A stretch of DNA of 64,000 bases from Epiperipatus broadwayi (taxonomy: Eukaryota; Animalia; Onychophora): the NCBI GenBank assembly GCA_028023455.1, contig JAQFVV010000003.1, positions 7,006,001-7,070,000 on the forward strand, in the 5' to 3' direction. A program made the position numbers and the translations under genes. The notes beneath the pieces were generated by a model. It made no database searches and was not told the DNA's origin. It saw only the letters and a list, made by a program, of their open reading frames with translations. Positions 1-54,100 of the stretch are shown here, piece after piece. How positions within the stretch are numbered: position 1 is the first letter of the stretch; the number at the start of each line of letters is the position of its first letter.

Positions 1-303
1 CAAAAAAATCACCTTTACAGTTGCGCCGCTTACACCGTTTTCTAATTCTACTATCACGCTCCCTTCCGCTTCTTTTTACTAACTATCACTTCTGTCCTCA
101 TACACGACTCTGGCCACCGCTTGACTCACGTCGATTCTGCCATCCCAAAACATCTAGTTTTGCTCCATGTTGACGCGCCATTCTACCTAACCCGCCCTCA
201 ACTCTCTCTATATATATTTTTAGTCTTTTTCTTTTAATAATAATATATAAAGTACGTCGTCCCGTAAATTTGTATAAAACATCATTTATATAAAGTAATA
301 ACA
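1..303. mobile_element. Probable end of an LTR-like element, truncated by the window edge
   Basis: CpG-retaining sequence unlike the AT-rich background. Ends ...GTAATAACA (CA at 302-303), one base before the TG of the next element. No coding evidence. Confidence 0.3.
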
Positions 304-304
304 A

Positions 305-2086
305 TGTCCCAAATTTTATTATAACGACTCGATCAGAATTCTATACCACTCTCTTACACAGAATCCTATCACAGGGTGGTTAGTGCTACGGGTGGAGTAA
401 TCAATATCATTGGAAAACTTTTGCCAATAACATTTATACTCGTTTACTAGAACACGTATTAGCCAATCAAACTTTTATTTATTTAAAGGAAGAAATCCTA
501 TGGGCGCCAGCCGAGCTTGTCGACAAGTCTGCTTGACCAATACGGTCTAGTACCCGCTCCCGCTAGCTCAGCTAAAATAATCAATCAAATATACTCCGCC
601 TACTTAAAAAATCACTTTTTAAAAATCTTTTCTACGCTAACTTTCTCGCTTTCTCTTTTCTTTATTTTAATTATTTAAGTTAAATCTAATTTGAGTAATA
701 ACTAAACAATGAAATATTCATTTACGCTATTATACTTCGTTTTGTCTTATAACACAATTATCTACACTTTCGATCAAGTTGAAATAAAATTTAATGCACT
801 CAAAGTTCCATATTATAAATACAAATTAATCATACGCATACGCTTACATTTGAAGTAACAATAAAATCTCATATAAATACATTTAGAAATAATCATACGC
901 ATACACTGATATTTAAACTCACACTAAAATACATTTGATAAAATAATTATACGCATTTATTTATATTGGCAATCACACTGAAATCTCTGGGTATTGGAGC
1001 TAACGACAATTAGTAGTTCATAAGATAAAGTTCAGAGTTTATTATTACGGCTTTAATTAGTGAGTTAGAAATTGAAACAAATATTACCTAGCTTTCTCCC
1101 CTCTGCACGGTTTTTTGAGCGTTGCTTCAATAGTGTTTCCTTCGGTCAGTTAGCGCTAACTGCTTGCAATCCGTTCCCGATGTCTTTGGGATCATGTGGG
1201 CTCCACGTGGACACTCCGTCTCCTTCTTGTTTATGCGACCATGATCGAATCTGGAACTGTCCGCTGATGTTATTGCCTGGAAGGATTCGGCCGGTTGTTC
1301 ACACGATGGTTTTAGCAATGCAGCATAGTATAATTAATGAACGACAATTGCTTAATAATTGCTTAGGAATAATAATACAAGCATTGATTAATAGAATAGA
1401 AAATTTGCCCCTTTTATATTTACAGTTCTTATCTCGCGGATTCAATCTACAATACGTAACTAATCCTCTGGTGTTTCAGTTATGGTCCGTGCTGATTTTC
1501 TGGTGTTCGCATTGGTTATTTAATTTCTTTGTATTCCCTGCTAGAGTTATTTCACTTTCTTTGTTATAGTCATTTCAATTCCTTTGTTAAAGTTTTTCCA
1601 ATTTCTTTGTTAAAGTTATTTGCACTAATTAGCCGTTTGCTGGAAATTTCTTAGGTTTGTCATTAGCTCCCATTGTTTATTACATTCATTCAATTACACA
1701 TATAATTTTTCTTTTTATTATGATTATAAGACAAAACGAATTCCACCTTGCTTTTTCTTTTTTTTTTTTTTTTTTTCTTAAAGCAATTTTAAATCGAATT
1801 TCAGTTTAGTCAAATCAAATTTCTAATCAAATCAAACCTAATTATATCAATTCTTAATTTTTTTTAGCTTTTATTTAATACGACTCAAAATTATATTTTA
1901 GAAAACTATTTATTTTATGCTTTTAACGCTCACCTGTCTATGAGAAAAAAATCTTTATTTTATTTTACCTTACACGAACTTTTAATTTTATTAATATTTA
2001 CACAAATCGCTTATTAATTAATATTATTTTTTAAATTATATGTACCGCCAACGCACACACACTCCTTCCTAATATATCTCGGTACA
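305..2086 (-). mobile_element. LTR-like element (~1.78 kb, Gypsy-type ends)
   Basis: Termini TGTCCC...GGTACA, followed by ATAT/(TA)n. CpG-rich. Minus-strand TATAAAAG at 1411-1418. Internal ~60 bp tandem repeats at ~820-980. Same length and layout as the 49365-51139 element. The left TSD is not visible. Confidence 0.6.
501..509 (-). promoter_or_regulatory. tRNA-Lys primer-binding-site-like motif TGGCGCCCA
   Basis: 9 nt complementary to the 3' end (...UGGGCGCCA) of metazoan tRNA-Lys(CUU), recalled from memory. A second match, to tRNA nt 2-16, lies at 559-572. Confidence 0.55.
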
Positions 2087-5000: not shown

Positions 5001-5920
5001 TTAATACTGTTACAAAAATTGACTTTTCCAATTCATGGGACATGATAATTCAAAATACTAATTTATATCATTACAGAAATTGTTATCCAACATTATAACC
5101 ATTCGGTTAGCTACTCATTCACTTATTCATTTATGATGATTTATAGTGTTATGGTATATATATATATAGCTGAAATTTTCCCTTTGTACTTTTAATATTT
5201 ACAACTGTAAATGGCATGAAAATCTTTTAATTAATATATATATATATATATAAAGTAAATGTGACATGTGCAATCTAACATTCCTTAATGATAAAAACCA
5301 ATAATTAGAAAGCAGTCATTGGATTTGATTGGCCCTAACATGTGGTGTTTCTTGATTAATCATGCTTTAGAGAAGAAAGTTTCATCTTTCTTTGTTCTCT
5401 TACCTACCCCCATATCCTAGTTTAAACCCTAGTAGTATTGCAAAGTGTGTGTCATGTTATTATCAGGCAAAATCTACGCATGTGCAATGCATTTATCACA
5501 TATATACGGTTATTATAGATAGTTGAGTTAATAATATAATGGAATTATAAATTGATTAATGTAATTTATAATTTGAATGTGTGTTCATATGTGGGTATAT
5601 ATATAAACACATAGTATGCTGAGACTACACATATATTTCAATATTATCTTTAGGGCTTATATTTAATATTGTTTTGCTCTCTTATTTTAAATATTTAAAA
5701 GATCACGCCATGAACTTTGTTTATTAGAAAGTTAAATAAGGGTTGTGAGGCTGAACAATAGTATTTCACTAATGCAACCCCATAAGAATATATTAATTGC
5801 TTAATTAATTAACTAATAAAAATGATAACATTTGGCAAGTTGCAAATCTCATCAACAAGGAAATAGACCGTCTTAAAGTATTTGCTTTAAAAAAAAATTT
5901 AAATCTTTTTTTTTTCTCAT

Positions 5921-6008
5921 GTGTCATAGCATCAGCCGGGAAGCAAACATGCTAATCCGGGACAACTGCTTGTAAAGCAACTTTCGCTGACCTTTCGACC
6001 ACCAATGC
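5921..6008 (-). mobile_element. Decayed copy of the short tRNA-Gly-derived SINE
   Basis: Aligns by eye to 22749-22838 (GCATTGGTGGTCGA...CCCGGCYGATGCTATGACAC) with most CpGs decayed. A-rich tail on the minus strand. Confidence 0.75.
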
Positions 6009-6733
6009 TTGACTAAAATCTTATTTTGTAAAACTGTAATAAAAGAATTAATGTAATAAAAGTAAATGTATTTGCAGCACCCTGCTGCAAACTTTTAGAT
6101 AGTAAAATTGATAATACACGCATATTATTTCACCGCAAGGTAAGCCAATAGAAAATATTAATGCCATACTTGACCAATATATAGAGTAGGATTTTGTAAT
6201 ATAATATAGTTGTCTCATTTGAAACTTAAATGTCAGAATAGAGGAAGGCAGGGACTGTTTTCCTACTTGGAGAATGGCCATCCTATATCCCAATACTACC
6301 TGCATGCCTCCAACTATAAGAAGAAAATTCTCATGACCTGTCACTGCCACCAGTGAGACTAGAAATGCTATTTCTAATGCCATCAAGAGGGATCTCACTG
6401 CTGGAATCAATATAATGATGCACTTATAATTAAAATGTAATATACTCCTACAATTGTATCTAAATTATATAATTTCAACCTATGTAACTTGGCTAATCTA
6501 TTCTTTAAATTATACTTTAATGTTAGGGTAAACGCTCTTGAATTTTATTAAATTATTTTCTTTATGATATTTTGTTATGATAATATGCCTGGATAACCTC
6601 CGACTGAGTGAATGAATCCCATTTTCCTTATAATAAACATGCCGCTACATTTCCATATGGGTTAGTTGTATAAATGGCAAATATTTTGTATCGAATCCTT
6701 TTTTCTACCTATTAGCTCAGATGTTATCTTTCA

Positions 6734-6735
<2 letters not shown>

Positions 6736-6783
<48 letters not shown>
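6736..6783. repeat. (TA)n microsatellite
   Basis: Directly visible. Confidence 0.95.
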
Positions 6784-6787
<4 letters not shown>

Positions 6788-8689
6788 CTATGGATTCAGT
6801 GAATCATATTGTGTTTTGTATAGTAGTTAATTCACCCATAGTAATCTATTCATGCTATCTCATATATTATTTTATTATTTGTTTATTTTAAGTTGAAATG
6901 TAATGTGGGTGTATGTGCAAAGTTATAACTATAGGGATATTTTCAACATGCATGATTAAACTTAGGTTTCTAAGAATCCCCTCGTCATGCATTCTTAACC
7001 CATTTAGTTATTATTACAACAATATTGAATGTGGTTAACTGTCTTGGAGTCATCTGATCTACCTTAATCTTTAAGCTGATAATTATGCAAATTTATTTGA
7101 AATCAAAATTTTAAGACTTAGGAATGTATTAAGTATAGCAGCACAATAACATGCTAAACTTTGAAAGTAATCTATTGTTAATTATTATTGTTATTGTATT
7201 TATTCACGTGTTGCTGGTGCAGATATATAAATCTATGCTTTTATAGTATTCTTTGTCAATCTTCTCCATGGGATACATACTGCTAAGACTATCCCAAATC
7301 TTTAAGGTTCATGCATCAGTGAACATGGAAGTCACACCTAGGAACCTAGCTGTTTGATCATGTATTCATGGATTTTACTGGGATGAGGGTCCAGTCCAGT
7401 GACCCTGCTTATTTGTGATGAACCCTTCACAGACATCTGGCATTCCACCGATCTAAATTATACATAGACAAAGCCCAGCAGTTTTGATACACCATCCTCC
7501 TGTATAGGTTTGCACACATAATCTCCATCAGCATCACCAATCACTAGTTAAACCCTATATATCTATATTTATCTAAAGCATTTAAGCTATCACATTACTT
7601 AATTCCTTCATATTCTTTCATAGATCAATCTCACATAGTTATGAATAATGAGACTCCTAATATTCTTGTGATTCTAAGTCCATGTGCACCTCTTGATTAG
7701 CTTAATAAATCTCATTAATAACATAAGTTACTTATCGCTATATATAATTATGTCTGTGATTATAATGCTTTAATATATTGCACACACTCACATCCCTTAA
7801 CCTGATTGGGTAACATTTCAAAAAGGCATATTGGTCTATGATTTTACCCTATATTAACCCAACAAAAGTATAGAACCTCAAATAATTAAATATTTCACCA
7901 TAATGAAATAATATGTATTATCTTTCATATATATATTCTGTAACATTAAGCACTACATTATTATCTGTATAATTGTATAATGAGTGAAGCCAATATATAT
8001 TCAGTTTGACAATTATTAATTTTTTTTTTTTTTAAATTATATCTGTTGTTGCCTTTCCATATGATCCATACTACATTATCTCACATTATTCATGCATTTC
8101 TAGAATTTATTAAAGATCTTAGCATTACTCTTTCATACACCACCCATAGATATGTATTGATAGTATGTTAGTGAACTTAGGGCAGGGCTTATTACTATTA
8201 AGGGTCTCATGCATCTTTCTGACCTCTGGCACTAGAAAGAAGATGTACTATTAGTAGCACCAGGAGCATTGTTCATGCAGTGGAGATTGTGGTAGCATGG
8301 GAAAATAGGTCAAGACTTAGTATTCTTTGGGATAGCTTCCCACCCAGATATGCTGAGCTTTCTGTATTCTGCTTGGACCCTGCATCTTGTTAACAGAATG
8401 AACCAGACCATTACATTAGACTATTTCATATGCATTATTATTATATATGAATCATTATTGTTATTAAAAATACAATTTTGGTTCTTTATTTTCAATTCAA
8501 TTTTACTTTTGTATATATAATCTATATTTTCATAGTCTGGGGGAGTTTAAATCCATGCCAGTAGAGATCCATACTGTAACATTTGTAAATGCAAATTCAA
8601 GTTTACTGATTAGTTAATTTGATCATAGAGAAGATAACATTCTAATATAAATGTTTCTTCTCTCTAGAGTTATAAGCAAATAGAAATAT

Positions 8690-13856: not shown

Positions 13857-13957
13857 TATTAATCAATGTCTGTATTCCAATTATAATAAAATATATATAA
13901 TTATTCAAAACAATACAATAATTAATACAGTAACAATATTTTAAACAAATATATACC

Positions 13958-14014
13958 AATTTAATAGAAGTACTTTCAACTATCTATGTAGTCGTTGTCA
14001 ACTAGACTCAAATT
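13958..14014 (-). ncRNA. Mirror copy of the family A hammerhead
   Basis: Exact reverse complement of 14941-14997. Confidence 0.7.
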
Positions 14015-14412
14015 GTATTAGAAAAAACCGTTACAAATGTAAACAAAAGCAATACGTCATACATCAATTTTCCCACAATTCATTAATTTTTATATTGGCT
14101 GTCTGTCTATTTATCAACTGTTGCTTTTCACTTTTTATTAACATAGCTTCTTTAATTTTGCGTTTATTATTATTTCTTTCAATACACAGAATTTTAACTT
14201 TATTAAAATCAAAATCAAAACCATAATTACATGTTACATTATGATCAAAAAATACTGATGGTGATACATCATCATTTCTAACATTCTCTTGTCTTGATTT
14301 TTGCACTCGTTTATATAATAACAAATGCTCCCTTGATCTTTTCTCCAATGTACATCGAGATTCCCCAATATATGCCTTTCCACAAAAACATAGCCATATA
14401 AATGGCTATGTA

Positions 14413-14631
14413 TGGCTATGTTTTTGTGGAAAGGCATATATTGGGGAATCTCGATGTACATTGGAGAAAAGATCAAGGGAGCATTTGGCTATGTTTTTGT
14501 GGAAAGGCATATATTGGGGAATCTCGATGTACATTGGAGAAAAGATCAAGGGAGCATTTGGCTATGTTTTTGTGGAAAGGCATATATTGGGGAATCTCGA
14601 TGTACATTGGAGAAAAGATCAAGGGAGCATT
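14413..14631 (+). repeat. 73 bp x3 tandem repeat inside the PLE
   Basis: Units start at 14413, 14486 and 14559. Identical by eye, no spacers. Confidence 0.95.
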
Positions 14632-14940
14632 TGTTATTATATAAACGAGTGCAAAAATCAAGACAAGAGAATGTTAGAAATGATGATGTATCACCATCAG
14701 TATTTTTTGATCATAATGTAACATGTAATTATGGTTTTGATTTTGATTTTAATAAAGTTAAAATTCTGTGTATTGAAAGAAATAATAATAAACGCAAAAT
14801 TAAAGAAGCTATGTTAATAAAAAGTGAAAAGCAACAGTTGATAAATAGACAGACAGCCAATATAAAAATTAATGAATTGTGGGAAAATTGATGTATGACG
14901 TATTGCTTTTGTTTACATTTGTAACGGTTTTTTCTAATAC

Positions 14941-14997
14941 AATTTGAGTCTAGTTGACAACGACTACATAGATAGTTGAAAGTACTTCTATTAAATT
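14941..14997 (+). ncRNA. Minimal type I hammerhead ribozyme, U3-A8 core variant (family A)
   Basis: AATTT-GAGTC-TAG TTGACAA C GACTA-CATAGA-TAGTT GAAA GTAC TT / CTA-TT-AAATT. Helices I and II pair; helix III region is the palindrome AAGTACTT. Confidence 0.7.
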
Positions 14998-15430
14998 GGT
15001 ATATATTTGTTTAAAATATTGTTACTGTATTAATTATTGTATTGTTTTGAATAATTATATATATATATATATATATAGGTGTAAAATGTTAATGAGTGCA
15101 TTTGCATAATTACAATAAAATTAGATTATATAAGAAGCAGCAACACAAAGAAATAAAAAGGCTATGTTTATGGTGCACAGCACCAAAAATGCACTCACCC
15201 AGACAATAAGACATTAACAGAAAAAAATAACTCAATTTATCTAACATATACATATATGTATGTAAATGTATTACATATATATTAATTAATTTAACAACTT
15301 CAGTAATTAATATTTGTAAATTCCAATAATAAATAAAAAAATTGTACAAAATAATCCCATACCTTTCCAAAAATGTTTTAGTGATTTTATCATAAATAAA
15401 TTCCTTTTAATTTTTTAGAAGTTTGTGGTT

Positions 15431-22737: not shown

Positions 22738-22841
22738 TTTTTTTTTAAGTGTCATAGCATCGGCCGGGACGCGAACCCGCAACCCGGGCAACTGCCTGCA
22801 AGTGCAAGGCAGTCGGCTGACCTCTCGACCACCAATGCAAA
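22738..22841 (-). mobile_element. Short tRNA-Gly-derived SINE with poly(A) and 20 bp TSD
   Basis: Minus 22838-22757 resembles tRNA-Gly(GCC) (GCATTGG...CCGATGC acceptor, GTCG/CGAC D-stem, GGTTCGCGTCC B-box-like). Followed by TATGACACTT and an A-run. TSD ACAAAAAG(T/C)TCATTACAGTT at 22718-22737 and 22842-22861. Confidence 0.85.
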
Positions 22842-48496: not shown

Positions 48497-49364
48497 CCAA
48501 TATCAAGTGATAAATTGTAAAAGAAAACAAATAAATATGCAGATAATTATTTGGAAGTCAAGTAAAATTCAATATCAAAATGGAATAATAGGACCCAGTG
48601 ATTCTTGTAGCTGCTCAGGGTTCGACAATAGCAGCATTTTTGTAGATATAGGATTTTCTACTTCTAAAAGTAATGATACAAAAACAACTGAAGAACCACC
48701 AACTAATCTGAATTTTTTTTCCATCTTCAACAATTAAAATGTGATATATATTTTTTACTTTCCTAATCAATTATTAGCATAGTCTTAGATAGTTAATAAC
48801 TTACATTCACCAAAGGCATTTTTGTCTTTGAAGAATTTGTGAACTGAGTACACAACAAAGCATCATATGACTGTCCAGTTATATTCACCATCTATATTAC
48901 AAACAATAATCCACCTTACCATTCTATTCCAAAGCCATCTATTATAATACAGAATAAATCATGGATATATGATAGAAGTATCATTCAATCCTACACTGAT
49001 TTCTAGCTTAAATTGTTTTTCATCAGTGAAAAGCGGTGGATTTTCACACACAAACATTTCAACAACCATATTCATTTTTTTGGTTCATCCAACAACAAGT
49101 AAATAATAATATATGGCAAACAGCCTTTAAATAACTTATTAAAGGACAAATATTTCTAGTTCAGAAACTATATATTTTAATGGTCCTAATAATATGCCAA
49201 CTGTAAGCATCTTTAAATCTATGGCAAAGGATAGTATAATATTATAAAACATCATATAATTCCCAGTTTGCTTTAACATCTGCATTAATAGTAGATATTA
49301 AAGCTGGAAACACCTTCAAGTTTTTAAATCTTATGTCATTAGTTTTTTTAATATATATATATAT

Positions 49365-51139
49365 TGAACCGAATTCAAATATGTGTATTCGAAACACGGC
49401 CTCTTAGGCAGAGAAGAACATACTCGGAGAGTATGTATGCCCAAACGATAGCTATAAAGTATATAACTAACGTTACATTTCCAGGACATAACTTCTTCTC
49501 GACTGTTGAGTTCAACACCAAGTTCAAAGCACTTTTTTGTTTGTGTATAAACACGGGCGCCAGCTGCTTATTCTAAAAGAATAGACAACGCACTTTGAAT
49601 AGTGGCAACTAACCCAATGCCTAAATCCACGACTAGCTCAGTTGTTTGTAATCACTAATAGATTATACTTAATTAGTGGTTAAAAGACTTGATAAAGAAT
49701 TTGTTAAAAAGAATTTATAAAAGGAATTGTAAAAGAATTGATAAAAAGGAATTGATAAAAAGAATTGACCGACAAATAAAGTTTAATTTTAAAGATAATT
49801 TATTAACTAACATTTATTTCTAAATTTAAACATTTTATAATTCTAATAAACACACGCATATTTTAAATTGACATTTCTAAACTAGTTTAAATATTCTTGT
49901 TTACTTTCATAACAAAACACTGGTAATTATCTAATTTAACTAATAATATTGATATAAGGATCACGCACATATTAACTCATGCACACACATAATAATATTA
50001 AAGTATTACATAGCATTTGAAATTTAATCACACACATCAATAGTTCATTTACGTATGATATCGAGTTCATATAATTAGACTCTTGGAGGATTCGCACGAA
50101 TTAATGAAATGCAATGGCTATTACAGTATAAACGAAAATAAGCAAATGTTTTACCTAGGATTTTGAACGTAGATTTAACACTTGGTTTTCTTCCAGTATG
50201 AATGGTTCCAGTATGAATGCTTCCAGCCGGCTGGGACGTTTCCTTACTGAGTTTCCTGATTTTCACGATTATTACTATCGGAGACAATTAGATACTGGCG
50301 GAGATTTTCTAAGATGTTAAGCTGACATTATTTCACGGGCAGATCTGCTGTTTTCTTGGACATCTGGGCTGGAGACAAACGTGCGTTCCAAAATATTCTC
50401 AGCACCGCATTTTGTTTCTTAACTGACTCAATCAATTTCCGAACTGCACTCTCTCAATAACCTTGTGAACTGATTGTCTCAACTCAATTAATTTGTGGAA
50501 TGAATCACTGTTCGATAAAAAAGTCTATTTATACCTGCGCCTTGTTGTCTTTCTCATATCTCCGGCAAAGATCTGTTGTCGAATTCCTTATCAATTAATC
50601 CTTTGATAAACGTGTTTTGGAAGATTGCTTAATTAGTAATAGCCATGCAAAAACGTATTGTTTTATATTAATTAATATCTAATAGCCATTGCCGTGTTTT
50701 TCAATGATAATCTTCCCTAACTTTCACATACATTTTATATATTTACAAATGTACATATATACGCACATATATTTTTAATACAATTTACTATTTAGTTTTA
50801 ACATTATTTTTTTCTTTAATTAAAATTGAATGAAAAGAGATTTGCATGTCTTAACTTTCTCAAATTATATTTTTACGAATACTAACAAAAACTCTTTACT
50901 TCCTTTTACAACTCTTAGTTTCATCTCTCAAATCAAGTCCCCCTCCCCCCTTTTGACCAATTAATTGTAGCTTTTTTATTTCAAAAACTAACGCTAGAAA
51001 ACTATTTAATTCTTATCCTTTTCGAAAACAAGCTGCAATAAATTCTTCAACATTTAATTTTATGTTTTTCTTTTATGAAAGATTACTTTAATAATAATTT
51101 TAGATAAAAATTATATGTGCCTATATCAATATAGGTACA
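49365..51139 (-). mobile_element. Solo-LTR-like element (1775 bp) with ATAT TSD
   Basis: TGAACC...GGTACA termini with ATAT on both sides within (TA)n. Minus-strand TATAAATA at 50526-50533 with TCATTC about 32 nt downstream. CpG-rich; no long ORF. Confidence 0.7.
49554..49562 (-). promoter_or_regulatory. tRNA-Lys PBS-like motif TGGCGCCCG
   Basis: 8 WC pairs plus one G-U with the tRNA-Lys(CUU) 3' end, preceded on the minus strand by CA-GC. A second match, to tRNA nt 4-16, lies at 49630-49642. Confidence 0.55.
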
Positions 51140-54100
51140 ATATATATATATATATATGTCACTGTTAAGTATATATGAATAAATCCAATGCTCCTCAAAG
51201 ATAAAGAACAAAAAGTAATCTGAATTTCATTGAAACTACTATAGTTTTTATTGTTTAGCCAAGCTTGCAACATATGGCTATAAAATAAAATAATAGGTTG
51301 ATTTACTATTTCTAAGGCAAGGAAATAACATGGATAAAACTGAATAAGAAAAAATTTTGACTGCAAAATCTTATATGCCAGTAAAATGTCAATGGATGTT
51401 TGTCAACTTTTAATTGTCATAATGATAGATAGGGAATAGAAGATAAACATAATTATAATATTATCATAATCTTCCCATTCTGTAAATCAAACATTTAATA
51501 ACTTCTGATTAAAACAAATCTATAGCAATAATCTTCCCTAAAGCAGATAAGTACAAGTACTTTCATAGGTCAAACAGTCAGCAACTCCTTGTGAAGTTGA
51601 ATCATTAATTGCCCATTCATTAGAACAAACAGCCAACAATTTTTTGTGAAGTTAAATCAGAAATTTTTTTTTTTTTCACTTTTACTATTGTCAAAAATGT
51701 CGAATTTAAACTAGACTATTCATTAGTAAGTGTTGTGTGGTATAAAAATGTGTTAATGGAAATCTGAAAATCTGTAAGTTCTTCCAATTTTTATGACTGT
51801 ACAGACTATATAACACTTAAAATATTCTTTAGGGATCATCTAAATCCTCTACACTAATCCTATATTGTAATTGGAAATGAAGCAATACATGATTGTTATT
51901 GCTTAATATCAAATTTATTTACAAATAAAATGTTTATAATATTACAAGCACAAAATGTATGTTTTTGGAAATAGTAATCTGCTGTATTTATTTAACTTCA
52001 AAACCATCTTTAGTAAATTTAAGCAATCAATGATATTATATAATACTAAGAACATTATGACCACATCCACAGGCTAGTTTCTGGCTTATGGTCTTTATTA
52101 ATAAAAAGTTTTGAACTACTGGCAGTTAATTACACATCTAACAGTCACCTTTAATTTTTTTTTTATAAAATCAAATTTATAATCTGAAATTTAGAAAAAA
52201 AACATTTTAGGATTTTGAATGTAAGCTAACTTGTTTGTATATTTGTATAGATGTGATAATAAAATAATGACTATACATTTTAATGACCTGAGTTTTTATA
52301 ATAACTGTGGACATCTTTAACATTTTATATAGCATAATATATACCAAAACAAAAATCATGGGCCTTTCTTTGCTTACATTCTATATGTTCTTTTAAGATT
52401 AATAATTTACTCTATTTCAGAGCCACCACTTTTGCAGAATTGAATAATCAATATAAATTAAATGATAATACCATAATCTACAATCCCAGACTAGTTTCTA
52501 TGTCCTTATTTTAAAGGTAATTTATCCAGAAACTTAATAAAGTAATATGAAATTATAATATTACTACCTAATGTTTAATGACTAACAAGTTTACATTATA
52601 TGCTCTGATATATGATGAATGTAAGTTAGGGAAGCCATTAAATATTAACAAAATAAAATTATCTTACTAGATAATATTAGTAGCATGCATGATGTCACCA
52701 GTTACCATTAACTAAAAGAATTACATTATTAAATAAATGTCTTATACATAATGCATTTGACAGACTCAATAAGTCACAAGCATCTTTAGATTCAACATAA
52801 TTATGTTTTATGGTAGTAGTCAATCATAAAATTCATATAATGCTGCAGAGGGTCTATGGTTATGAAGAAAACACTAGCTACATTGCAATCAGTTATGAAT
52901 TAGGAATTTGATATATCATTATTAACTAGTTATTTAATAAACATTCAGATCTAAAAAAGAAAGAGCTATTGATTTAAAAATTGGTATTAATTCTTTACAA
53001 TATAATACCTACAGATTCCCAAGTGCCTTTTGTGTATATAATAAAATAACACAACTAAAATTACTTAATAGAAAGCAAAACTACCCAGATTATTTGCACC
53101 AGTGTTGCTGTTTGAGTTAGAAGACTTCTCCCATGTTAAATAACTGTTTCACTGGATACTTCACACTTGAATTTATCAGCAAAGATGTTTCTTCAAAAAG
53201 GTAATAATATCTAGAAGTATAAGACACAATACAATTTTCAATATTAGACTGTTCACTGGTAGTTATTTGAGAGAGCAGTTTTTGATAATGATGATGATGA
53301 TGATAATACATTTTATAGTTCAGAAAAATCATATTACAGTTGAGCACCCTAGTGAGAAACATGAGCATACAACAATTCTTTTCCAGATAGGTATAACCAT
53401 GTTTTATTATTATTATTTACATTATTAAACTGCAAATTGATTCTGGAACTTTTAATAGTGAATCCACCACTCTGCCATTGTTATAAAATATATAGGATCA
53501 ATTACTGAATGATTTTTAGAGGGTGTGTGGTGCTTGAGTGCTAAAAGTTATAAATTGAGCTTCAATTCAGTAATAAGAAAAGTTGACAAAACAGTAAGAA
53601 TGTTGCCATTTAAAAACAATGAAATAATACTTTTAAAGTCTAGTTTTTATAAATTCTGAATAGTAAAAATTATATCTACCATTCATAGATAATATAGAAA
53701 TTCATATATCTGTGTATCATTCACTTAATTCAAGTAACATTTTAACAATTACATATAATTGCATAAAAACTAGTAAAACATTTGTATTTTATATTGGACT
53801 ATTTCCATCATCTAATATGAGTATAGAATGTCTTTAAAAAAATTTAACTTTATTTAAATATTCCAAATATATTCAATTGTTAGTAATAGTACATCAAACA
53901 AGTTAGTATATGTAGAACATTTTGAGAGGTATTATTCTCCCCTCTTCTTCATGTGTTGCTGGCCTGACCAGTAACAGTACTAGCATGGGATTCAAATCTG
54001 GATCCTTAGATTAATGAATATTAAATTTTAAGATAATGCTCTAACCAACTGAGCCATCCTGCCAAAGGCAAGAGTTAGTTGAAATTTCATATACTTATCT

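What the first reader, a model, noticed from the sequence alone, without database searches (positions are those of the whole stretch)
49365..51139. Second, unalignable 1.78 kb element with the same tRNA-Lys motifs ~190 nt inside a TSD-bounded end
Seen: TG...CA ends with ATAT on both sides, PBS-like 49562-49554, and a 13 bp match to tRNA nt 4-16 at 49642-49630. Length (1775 vs 1782 bp), TATA position (~610-670 nt from the 5' end) and PBS-to-end distance (189 vs 196 nt) match the 305-2086 element, although the rest cannot be aligned by eye. Established: in standard LTR replication the PBS lies outside the LTR, so a solo LTR should not contain it. Inference: either an LTR lineage that keeps a tRNA-binding module inside U5 (a regulatory role or a second primer site), or both are 5'LTR+leader pieces and the left TG ends are coincidental.
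Basis: partly seen in the sequence, partly recalled or inferred. Interest (0 to 1): 0.75.

Follow-up and report, generated by a model that had tools for sequence, protein, structure and literature searches.

The report
Second tRNA-Lys site inside LTRs
The 1.8-kb stretch is a lone terminal repeat (solo LTR) of a retrovirus-like jumping gene, and 189 bases inside its end it carries a folded module matching both ends of the lysine tRNA that primes its copying; related families keep the same module in thousands of copies, so it is probably a retained primer-docking domain rather than chance or ordinary leader sequence.

Summary
Window 49365-51139 (sense on the minus strand) is a solo LTR of a pol-less Ty3/Gypsy family, inserted in a (TA)n tract.

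In a full-length copy both LTRs contain the motifs and the 189 nt after them. A separate, longer tRNA-Lys primer site follows the 5' LTR.

The comparison element 305-2086 was mis-bounded. Its LTR runs on to window 182, followed by a primer site at 180-162. It is the 5' LTR of a full-length element that leaves the window.

The motif pair occurs 5251 times in the genome (reversed-pattern control 0). It lies inside the LTRs of several mutually unalignable families, whose Pol proteins are only 62-72% identical where Pol could be compared. In four families it sits in the same predicted fold: a long closing stem, a hairpin, an unpaired UGGCGCCC and, in three of them, a second hairpin.

Best reading: an old primer-binding domain absorbed into U5 and kept by selection, probably as an auxiliary tRNA-Lys docking element. 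The function is untested.

The scan had already found stacked primer sites elsewhere in this genome (s1-085571, s1-187187). It had not found this conserved U5 module.

The parts
49365..51139 (-). Solo LTR (1775 nt) of the non-autonomous 'el2' Ty3/Gypsy family, in a (TA)n tract
   Evidence: 92-96% identical full-length matches elsewhere in the genome. No PPT upstream and no PBS downstream here. L031 shows two such LTRs flanking a PBS, a 2.36-kb interior and a PPT.
50526..50533 (-). TATA box (TATAAATA), the likely U3/R region
   Evidence: Read from the sequence. Inferred; no RNA data.
49799..49804 (-). AATAAA followed by a U/GU-rich tract; the likely R/U5 border, which places the module in U5
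   Evidence: Read from the sequence. The surrounding block is conserved in the A, C and F family representatives. Inferred.
49508..49652 (-). Structured PBS-like domain in U5: long closing stem, hairpin, unpaired UGGCGCCC, hairpin, A-rich linker
   Evidence: RNAalifold on 8 representatives of the A/C/F families: 94% of cells paired, 11 pairs with changes on both sides, covariation 0.42 versus at most 0.15 for slid controls. Single-sequence folds give the same architecture in families A, B, D and G.
49630..49642 (-). Complement of tRNA-Lys(CTT) nt 4-16 (acceptor 5' strand plus D arm), 12 of 13
49554..49562 (-). Inner PBS-like site TGGCGCCCG. Its first 8 nt complement the tRNA-Lys 3' end including CCA; 189 nt of LTR follow.
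   Evidence: Present in both LTRs of L031.
182..2086 (-). Corrected bounds of the comparison element 'el1': the 5' LTR (1905 nt) of a full-length non-autonomous element that runs off the window start
   Evidence: The 3' LTR's copy of the module lies at C3:7002902.
559..571 (-). el1 complement of the tRNA-Lys 5' part (CTGAGCTAGCGGG, 12 of 13)
501..509 (-). el1 inner PBS-like site TGGCGCCCA, 319 nt before the true LTR end
162..180 (-). el1 outer primer-binding site: a 19-nt, bulged complement of the tRNA-Lys(CTT) 3' end, one base after the LTR end
   Evidence: Some el1 copies carry the canonical 18-mer at this place (L089).

Best explanation
Window 49365-51139 is a solo LTR of a gene-poor (gag-like ORF only) Ty3/Gypsy retrotransposon that uses tRNA-Lys(CTT) as primer.

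The tRNA-Lys motifs belong to a roughly 145-nt structured domain in U5. The domain has the build of a primer-binding domain: a closing stem, a hairpin, an exposed 8-nt complement of the tRNA 3' end, and a second hairpin. Upstream of it lies a 9-18-nt complement of the tRNA 5' end and D arm.

DNA synthesis does not start there. It starts at a second, longer tRNA-Lys site one base beyond the LTR, which is why the domain is copied into both LTRs.

The domain most likely began as an older primer site, together with a relic of a read-through copy of the tRNA. It was absorbed into U5 when priming moved to a downstream site.

It has since been kept by selection across a clade of families, probably because it docks tRNA-Lys or otherwise organises the 5' RNA for initiation, packaging or dimerisation.

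Shown: location, copy number, family spread and predicted fold with covariation. Inferred: origin, selection and tRNA docking.
For: - Both LTRs of full-length copies hold the module, and an outer PBS and a PPT flank the interior.
- L010, a 3' LTR, is followed by 13 nt of canonical tRNA-Lys PBS. L089 and L090 carry the canonical 18-mer after the LTR. The outer site is therefore the one that is primed.
- The motif pair has 5251 hits against 0 for the control, often in pairs at LTR spacing, in families A, B, C, D, F and G.
- In a sample drawn by LTR end plus canonical PBS (blind to the module), 12 of the 13 elements I judged clade members by eye (similar U5/leader) carry it, allowing for CpG decay.
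- Pol of the el2-side family A3 is about 62% identical to el1 Pol, and family G about 72%. Public relatives reach at most 42%.
- The el1 and el2 LTRs share words only at chance level, apart from the motifs at collinear positions.
- The inner match stops sharply after 8-9 nt in all groups, with unrelated bases beyond.
- The same fold is predicted in A, B, D and G, with covariation in A/C/F.
- No subfamily-defining change falls in the 9-nt core or the 8-nt site among 28 copies.
- Origin: family D keeps tRNA-complement similarity up to the anticodon loop upstream of the D-arm complement. Other families show stacked LTR-end/PBS units and tRNA relics.
Against: - No RNA or binding data exist. U3/R/U5 borders are inferred from TATA and AATAAA only.
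- Most family representatives were found through the exact motif pattern, so conservation is partly ascertained. The unbiased sample is small.
- The structure was predicted on the same alignment that was used to count covariation, and that alignment has only two deep clades.
- The D-arm complement lies outside the closing stem, so the two motifs are not obviously brought together.
- Absorption of primer sites is frequent in this genome, so some families could have gained similar modules independently.
- Eight base pairs is a weak tRNA contact.
Confidence: 0.6

Rival explanations
1. Pure fossil: an old primer site and tRNA read-through scrap absorbed into U5, with no present function. Its spread reflects only the recent amplification of a few related families.
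For: Stacked or absorbed primer sites and tRNA-Lys relics are common in this genome. The inner site has only 8-9 matching nt and is not preceded by an LTR-terminus-like GGTACA. Representatives were partly selected by the motif.
Against: The motifs survive between lineages with about 62% Pol identity whose LTRs are otherwise at chance similarity. The cut-off after 8 nt is sharp rather than showing scattered decay. The fold is conserved with compensatory changes.
Confidence: 0.22
2. The GGCGCC palindrome in the exposed UGGCGCCC serves as an RNA dimerisation or long-range pairing site (for example with the outer PBS). The tRNA resemblance only records its origin.
For: GGCGCC is self-complementary and sits unpaired in a multiloop in all four folds. 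It is the only 90%-GC 10-mer shared by the two LTRs in a 28%-GC background. From my own knowledge, not checked here: the same palindrome in the HIV-2 PBS has been linked to dimerisation in vitro.
Against: It does not explain the co-conserved complement of the tRNA 5' end. In family G the site reads TGGCGCCT, which breaks the palindrome but still pairs with the tRNA through G-U.
Confidence: 0.1
3. The inner module is a working alternative initiation site (a short PBS plus a D-arm contact, as in Ty1/Ty3) that is used alongside the outer site.
For: An 8-nt PBS with extra tRNA contacts is enough for Ty3. The domain has full PBS-domain architecture.
Against: Priming there should give LTRs ending at the inner site, but only 1 such candidate exists genome-wide. 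Apart from family E, only one D-type copy shows the D-arm complement followed by a full canonical PBS. The bases before the inner site are not LTR-terminus-like.
Confidence: 0.05
4. Both elements are 5' LTR plus leader fragments, and the 189 nt is ordinary leader.
Against: 3' LTRs and solo LTRs contain the full tail and are followed directly by (TA)n.
Confidence: 0.02

Closest known systems
Bipartite/extended primer-binding sites of yeast Ty3 and Ty1
   Same: A short (8-10 nt) complement of the tRNA 3' end, plus separate segments that pair with other tRNA arms, including the D arm (review PMC5371799). Ty3 is also a Ty3/Gypsy element.
   Different: Here the short site and the D-arm complement lie together inside U5, 189-319 nt (el2, el1) to roughly 330 nt upstream of a second, long PBS that is the one actually primed. 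The primer is tRNA-Lys, not tRNAiMet. Binding is untested.
Retroviral PBS domain with extra-PBS tRNA contacts (HIV-1, FIV, RSV)
   Same: U5 sequences upstream of the PBS pair with the primer tRNA, and stems flank the PBS (stated in PMC5371799). The stem-hairpin-site-hairpin build is similar.
   Different: Those contacts serve the PBS next to them. Here the domain carries its own truncated PBS and is duplicated in both LTRs.
Retroviral vectors engineered with two primer-binding sites (Voronin and Pathak 2004, J Virol 78:5402; seen only as a reference entry)
   Same: Two tRNA sites on one genome. From my own knowledge: whichever site is used sets the U5 end of the progeny.
   Different: That is an artificial construct with two full sites. 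Here it is a natural, clade-wide arrangement with one site reduced to 8 nt. The paper itself could not be read.
Stacked 'LTR end + tRNA-Lys PBS' arrays and over-copied tRNA primers noted elsewhere in this genome (s1-085571, s1-187187, s1-174606)
   Same: Same genome and the same tRNA. The same idea that an LTR boundary moves when another primer-site copy is used. I saw similar arrays in L083 and L094.
   Different: Those are tandem, recent, copy-specific arrays. This is a single, diverged, structured module shared by several families.
Non-autonomous LTR elements (LARD/TRIM type)
   Same: The el2 family and the 3.6-kb form of el1 have long LTRs and an interior without pol.
   Different: They keep an open gag-like or coiled-coil ORF. 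el1 LTRs are shared with an autonomous 1240-aa Gag-Pol form.

Membership tests
LTR retrotransposon, solo LTR | The same sequence occurs as direct repeats flanking an interior with a PBS after the 5' copy and a polypurine tract before the 3' copy | tested here: met
   L031: LTRs at 1028-2805 and 5168-6944 (98.5% identical), PBS from 2807, PPT at 5149-5162.
LTR retrotransposon, solo LTR | TG..CA termini with a short inverted repeat, and a target-site duplication | tested here: inconclusive
   The termini are TGTACC..GGTTCA, an imperfect inverted repeat. The flanks are (TA)n, so the duplication cannot be sized. ATAT is consistent in most copies.
Ty3/Gypsy (Metaviridae) | Pol domain order protease, RT, RNase H, integrase | tested here: met
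   The el1 autonomous form has a 1240-aa ORF with Pfam gag, aspartyl protease, RVT_1, RT_RNaseH, Integrase_H2C2, rve and SH3_Tf2-1. The el2-side family A3 has the same order but is broken by frameshifts. The clade within Gypsy was not resolved: the best named relatives are insect elements at 42% identity or less.
Canonical primer-binding site | Lies within a few bases of the 3' end of the 5' LTR and is not part of the LTR | tested here: not met
   The inner site is 189 nt (el2) or 319 nt (el1) inside the LTR, and it is present in 3' and solo LTRs.
Canonical primer-binding site | Complementary to the 3' end of a host tRNA, including CCA | tested here: met
   8 nt (el2) or 9 nt (el1) match tRNA-Lys(CTT) of L043. 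The outer site matches over 18-45 nt, with bulges in some subfamilies.
Bipartite/extended PBS (Ty1/Ty3 type) | A second RNA segment complementary to another part of the same tRNA | tested here: met
   12 of 13 to tRNA nt 4-16 in el2, 12 of 13 in el1, and 16 of 18 in family G.
Bipartite/extended PBS (Ty1/Ty3 type) | The segments bind the primer tRNA and are needed for initiation | not testable with these tools
   Needs annealing, probing and replication assays.
Retroviral-type PBS domain | The site is exposed between flanking hairpins and closed by a long-range stem, conserved by covariation | tested here: met
   (prediction only).

The most novel reading that the evidence does not exclude
A whole clade of animal Ty3/Gypsy elements depends on a U5-embedded 'split clamp' that pairs with both strands of the opened acceptor stem of tRNA-Lys: the 3' end on UGGCGCCC, and the 5' end plus D arm on CUGAGCUAG. 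The clamp would capture or unfold the primer before it is handed to the real primer site downstream. That would be a two-station mode of primer placement not described for retroelements.
Probability: 0.25. Interest if true: 0.7.

Novelty: new variant of a known kind. Interest (0 to 1): 0.5.

Why it matters
Textbook LTR anatomy puts the primer site outside the LTR. Here a primer-site-like, tRNA-complementary, structured domain is a stable part of U5 in thousands of copies, next to a separate working primer site.

If it is retained by selection, it offers a natural system for two questions: how retroelements choose and place their tRNA primer, and how LTR boundaries move when priming shifts.

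It also matters for annotation. PBS-based LTR finders would place the LTR end 189-319 nt too early in these families.

Tried and rejected
- Aligning the two LTRs directly gives nothing beyond the termini. The k-mer test confirms chance-level similarity apart from the motifs.
- I looked for the rest of a tRNA copy upstream of the D-arm complement. It is absent in families A, B, C and F, and only family D shows a weak extension to the anticodon loop. A reading as an antisense tRNA gene or Pol III A/B box was dropped: no B box was found, and ARAGORN finds only an unrelated tRNA-Cys in the window.
- I tested whether relatives have the D-arm complement next to a full, LTR-adjacent PBS (the possible ancestral state). 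Only family E (55 hits, an 8-nt match that could be chance) and a single D-type copy fit.
- My first tRNA-Lys pattern was too strict and found nothing.
- D-type loci gave no Pol or gag homology in 6 kb downstream, so family D cannot be placed on a protein tree.
- The Voronin and Pathak paper is not held.
- Two literature searches found no report of a U5-embedded second PBS domain. That is not proof of absence.
The consensus line printed by the alignment tool was not used.

Full report
**What is at 49365-51139.** The window is AT-rich (about 27% GC) and belongs to a 5.6-Gb assembly. Read on the minus strand, the element starts TGTACC and ends GGTTCA, and both flanks are (TA)n. A search of the assembly returned full-length matches at 92-96% identity (40 of 4995 candidates were scored), several of them as pairs about 4.14 kb apart.

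One pair (L031) shows the full anatomy:
- 5' LTR at 1028-2805 and 3' LTR at 5168-6944; the two are 98.5% identical.
- An interior of 2362 nt with only a 247-aa ORF that has no Pfam match.
- A polypurine tract at 5149-5162, directly before the 3' LTR.
- Directly after the 5' LTR, one A and then a 27-nt stretch (L031:2807-2833) that is a bulged complement of the 3' part of tRNA-Lys(CTT).

The window copy has neither a PPT before it nor a PBS after it, so it is a solo LTR. Among the 30 fetched loci of this family I counted 7 that are clearly 5' LTRs and 5 that are clearly 3' LTRs. Most of the rest end directly in (TA)n.

The genome's own tRNA-Lys(CTT) gene was found in L043, complete with a Pol III terminator. 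Against it, 49562-49554 reads TGGCGCCCG, whose first 8 nt complement the tRNA 3' end including CCA. 49642-49630 complements tRNA nt 4-16 at 12 of 13 positions. Both LTRs of L031 carry both motifs and the tail after them. A pattern for an LTR ending there next to a TA repeat has one hit in the whole genome.

**The outer site is the one primed.**
- One 3' LTR (L010) is followed by 13 nt of canonical tRNA-Lys PBS and then (TA)n.
- Some 5' LTRs are followed by the canonical 18-mer (L090; L016 with CpG decay).

**The comparison element 305-2086 was mis-bounded.** Its family is young (97-100% identity). It occurs as pairs with a 3.6-kb or a 6.06-kb period. It is then followed either by (TA)n or by A plus a 19-nt bulged tRNA-Lys complement.

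In the window the LTR is 182-2086 and the primer site is 180-162. The interior runs off the window start, and the second LTR's module lies 3600 nt away. The neighbouring stretch holds an open 402-aa gag-like ORF. The 6.06-kb form encodes an open 1240-aa Gag-protease-RT-RNase H-integrase protein, so this is a Ty3/Gypsy element. The inner motifs therefore also lie inside this LTR, 319 nt from its end.

**How general the module is.** The pattern CTGAGCTAG, 35-95 nt, TGGCGCCC has 5251 hits, against 0 for the reversed control. The hits fall into several families with different intervening sequence, and many form pairs at LTR spacing.

I fetched representatives of families A2, A3, A4, B', C, C2, D, D2, F and E, and saw a further family (G) in the later outer-site sample. 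Apart from family E, in every representative where an LTR end could be recognised the module lies inside the LTR:
- The tail after the inner site is about 55-80 nt in family D, about 190 nt in A, about 210-290 nt in C/C2 and about 320-340 nt in B and F.
- True LTR ends resemble GGTACA, the inverted repeat of TGTACC.
- The outer PBS ranges from 18 nt to a 45-nt complement reaching the anticodon loop in family F.
- The inner match stops after 8-9 nt in all groups, with unrelated bases beyond.

To reduce ascertainment bias, I sampled 20 elements by 'LTR end plus canonical PBS' alone. Of these, 13 resembled the A/B/C/F/G group in U5 or leader as judged by eye, and 12 of those 13 carry the module, allowing for CpG decay. 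The exception is a rearranged copy. Seven elements from other families lack it. Several of those show other tRNA-Lys relics or stacked LTR-end units.

**Depth of conservation.** Pol of the A3 family (broken by frameshifts) is about 62% identical to el1 Pol. Pol of family G is about 72% identical. The best public relatives, mostly insect elements with generic names, reach only 42%.

The el1 and el2 LTRs share 8- and 9-mers at the level of shuffled controls. The exceptions are collinear: GCTGGCGCCC at position 1576 from the LTR start in both, and CTGAGCTAG at positions 1516 and 1499. Among 28 el2 copies there is no shared (subfamily-defining) change in the 9-nt core or the 8-nt site, while neighbouring positions, including the ninth base, do vary.

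**Structure.** An alignment of eight A/C/F representatives gives a consensus fold with these parts: a long closing stem, a hairpin just 5' of the site, the site itself essentially unpaired, a second hairpin, and an A-rich linker. In that alignment 94% of cells are paired and 11 pairs have changes on both sides. Covariation is 0.42, against at most 0.15 for slid controls, and 0 of 500 shuffles reach it.

Single-sequence folds of el2, el1, family D and family G give the same architecture, although their sequences cannot be aligned. The outer PBS is also flanked by hairpins. The AATAAA at 49799-49804 and its conserved surroundings lie upstream of the module, which places it in U5. This is an inference.

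**Interpretation.**
- Origin: read-through copies of the primer and stacked 'LTR end + PBS' units are common in this genome. Family D retains weak tRNA-complement similarity up to the anticodon loop just upstream of the D-arm complement. If priming moves to a downstream site, everything upstream, including the old site, becomes U5 and is copied into both LTRs. This follows from the standard reverse-transcription scheme.
- Retention: the sharp 8-nt boundary, the survival of the motifs across about 62% Pol identity, and the conserved fold argue for selection rather than a decaying fossil.
- Function: both motifs complement the same tRNA, one on each strand of its acceptor stem. Docking of tRNA-Lys is therefore the most economical function. 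It resembles the extended or bipartite sites of Ty1 and Ty3 and the extra-PBS contacts of retroviruses (PMC5371799). This step is inferred, not shown.
- Rivals: a functionless fossil, a GGCGCC dimerisation palindrome, or a rarely used alternative initiation site.

**Limits.** There are no RNA or binding data. The structure and its covariation counts come from the same alignment.

Noticed in passing
window 49340-49364 and 51140-51157; L001-L030; L045-L054: Every sampled copy of these families sits in ATAT/(TA)n, which indicates a strong target preference. From memory, not checked here: Drosophila 17.6/297/gypsy-type elements also insert at ATAT/TATA.
   Followed up: partly
L031:2807-2833; window 162-180; L008, L018, L020, L022, L023: The outer primer sites of young subfamilies are bulged relative to tRNA-Lys(CTT) (4 or 6 matching bases, extra bases, then a long match), and yet they are identical in many copies. 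A minority of copies carry the canonical 18-mer. It is unexplained why copying of the tRNA does not restore them.
   Followed up: partly
L010 (C245:1231572-1236345), just after the 3' LTR: A 3' LTR is followed by 13 nt of canonical tRNA-Lys PBS and then (TA)n. It looks like an integrated end that kept the plus-strand copy of the primer.
   Followed up: no
L044:259-1464 (minus strand), L031:3162-3902, L055 and L059 interiors: Non-autonomous elements with el1-type and el2-type LTRs share a related coiled-coil/gag-like ORF (N-terminus ESPI[YF]FKNPQ) that the autonomous forms lack. This suggests one parasitic lineage that captured LTRs from different autonomous partners.
   Followed up: partly
L083, L084, L094, L076: Unrelated tRNA-Lys-primed families show tandem 'LTR end (+PBS)' units upstream of the used PBS. 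L084 has an exact 13-nt complement of the tRNA-Lys anticodon arm about 356 nt upstream.
   Followed up: partly
L072 (family F), about 330 nt after the inner site: The outer PBS is a 45-nt complement of tRNA-Lys(CTT) reaching the anticodon loop, with a few CpG-type changes. It is an over-copied primer fixed in a family.
   Followed up: no
window 22756-22838: A tRNA-Cys(GCA) gene called by ARAGORN, on the minus strand. It is unrelated to the finding.
   Followed up: no
window 13882-15073: 518-nt inverted repeats, 99% complementary, around three exact 73-nt tandem units. Other notes of the scan place a hammerhead/Penelope-like element here.
   Followed up: no
C6197:15628409-15628438: The only genome-wide candidate for an el2-type LTR that ends at the inner CA and is followed by a TA repeat. 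It could be a rare product of priming at the inner site, or a mutated copy.
   Followed up: no
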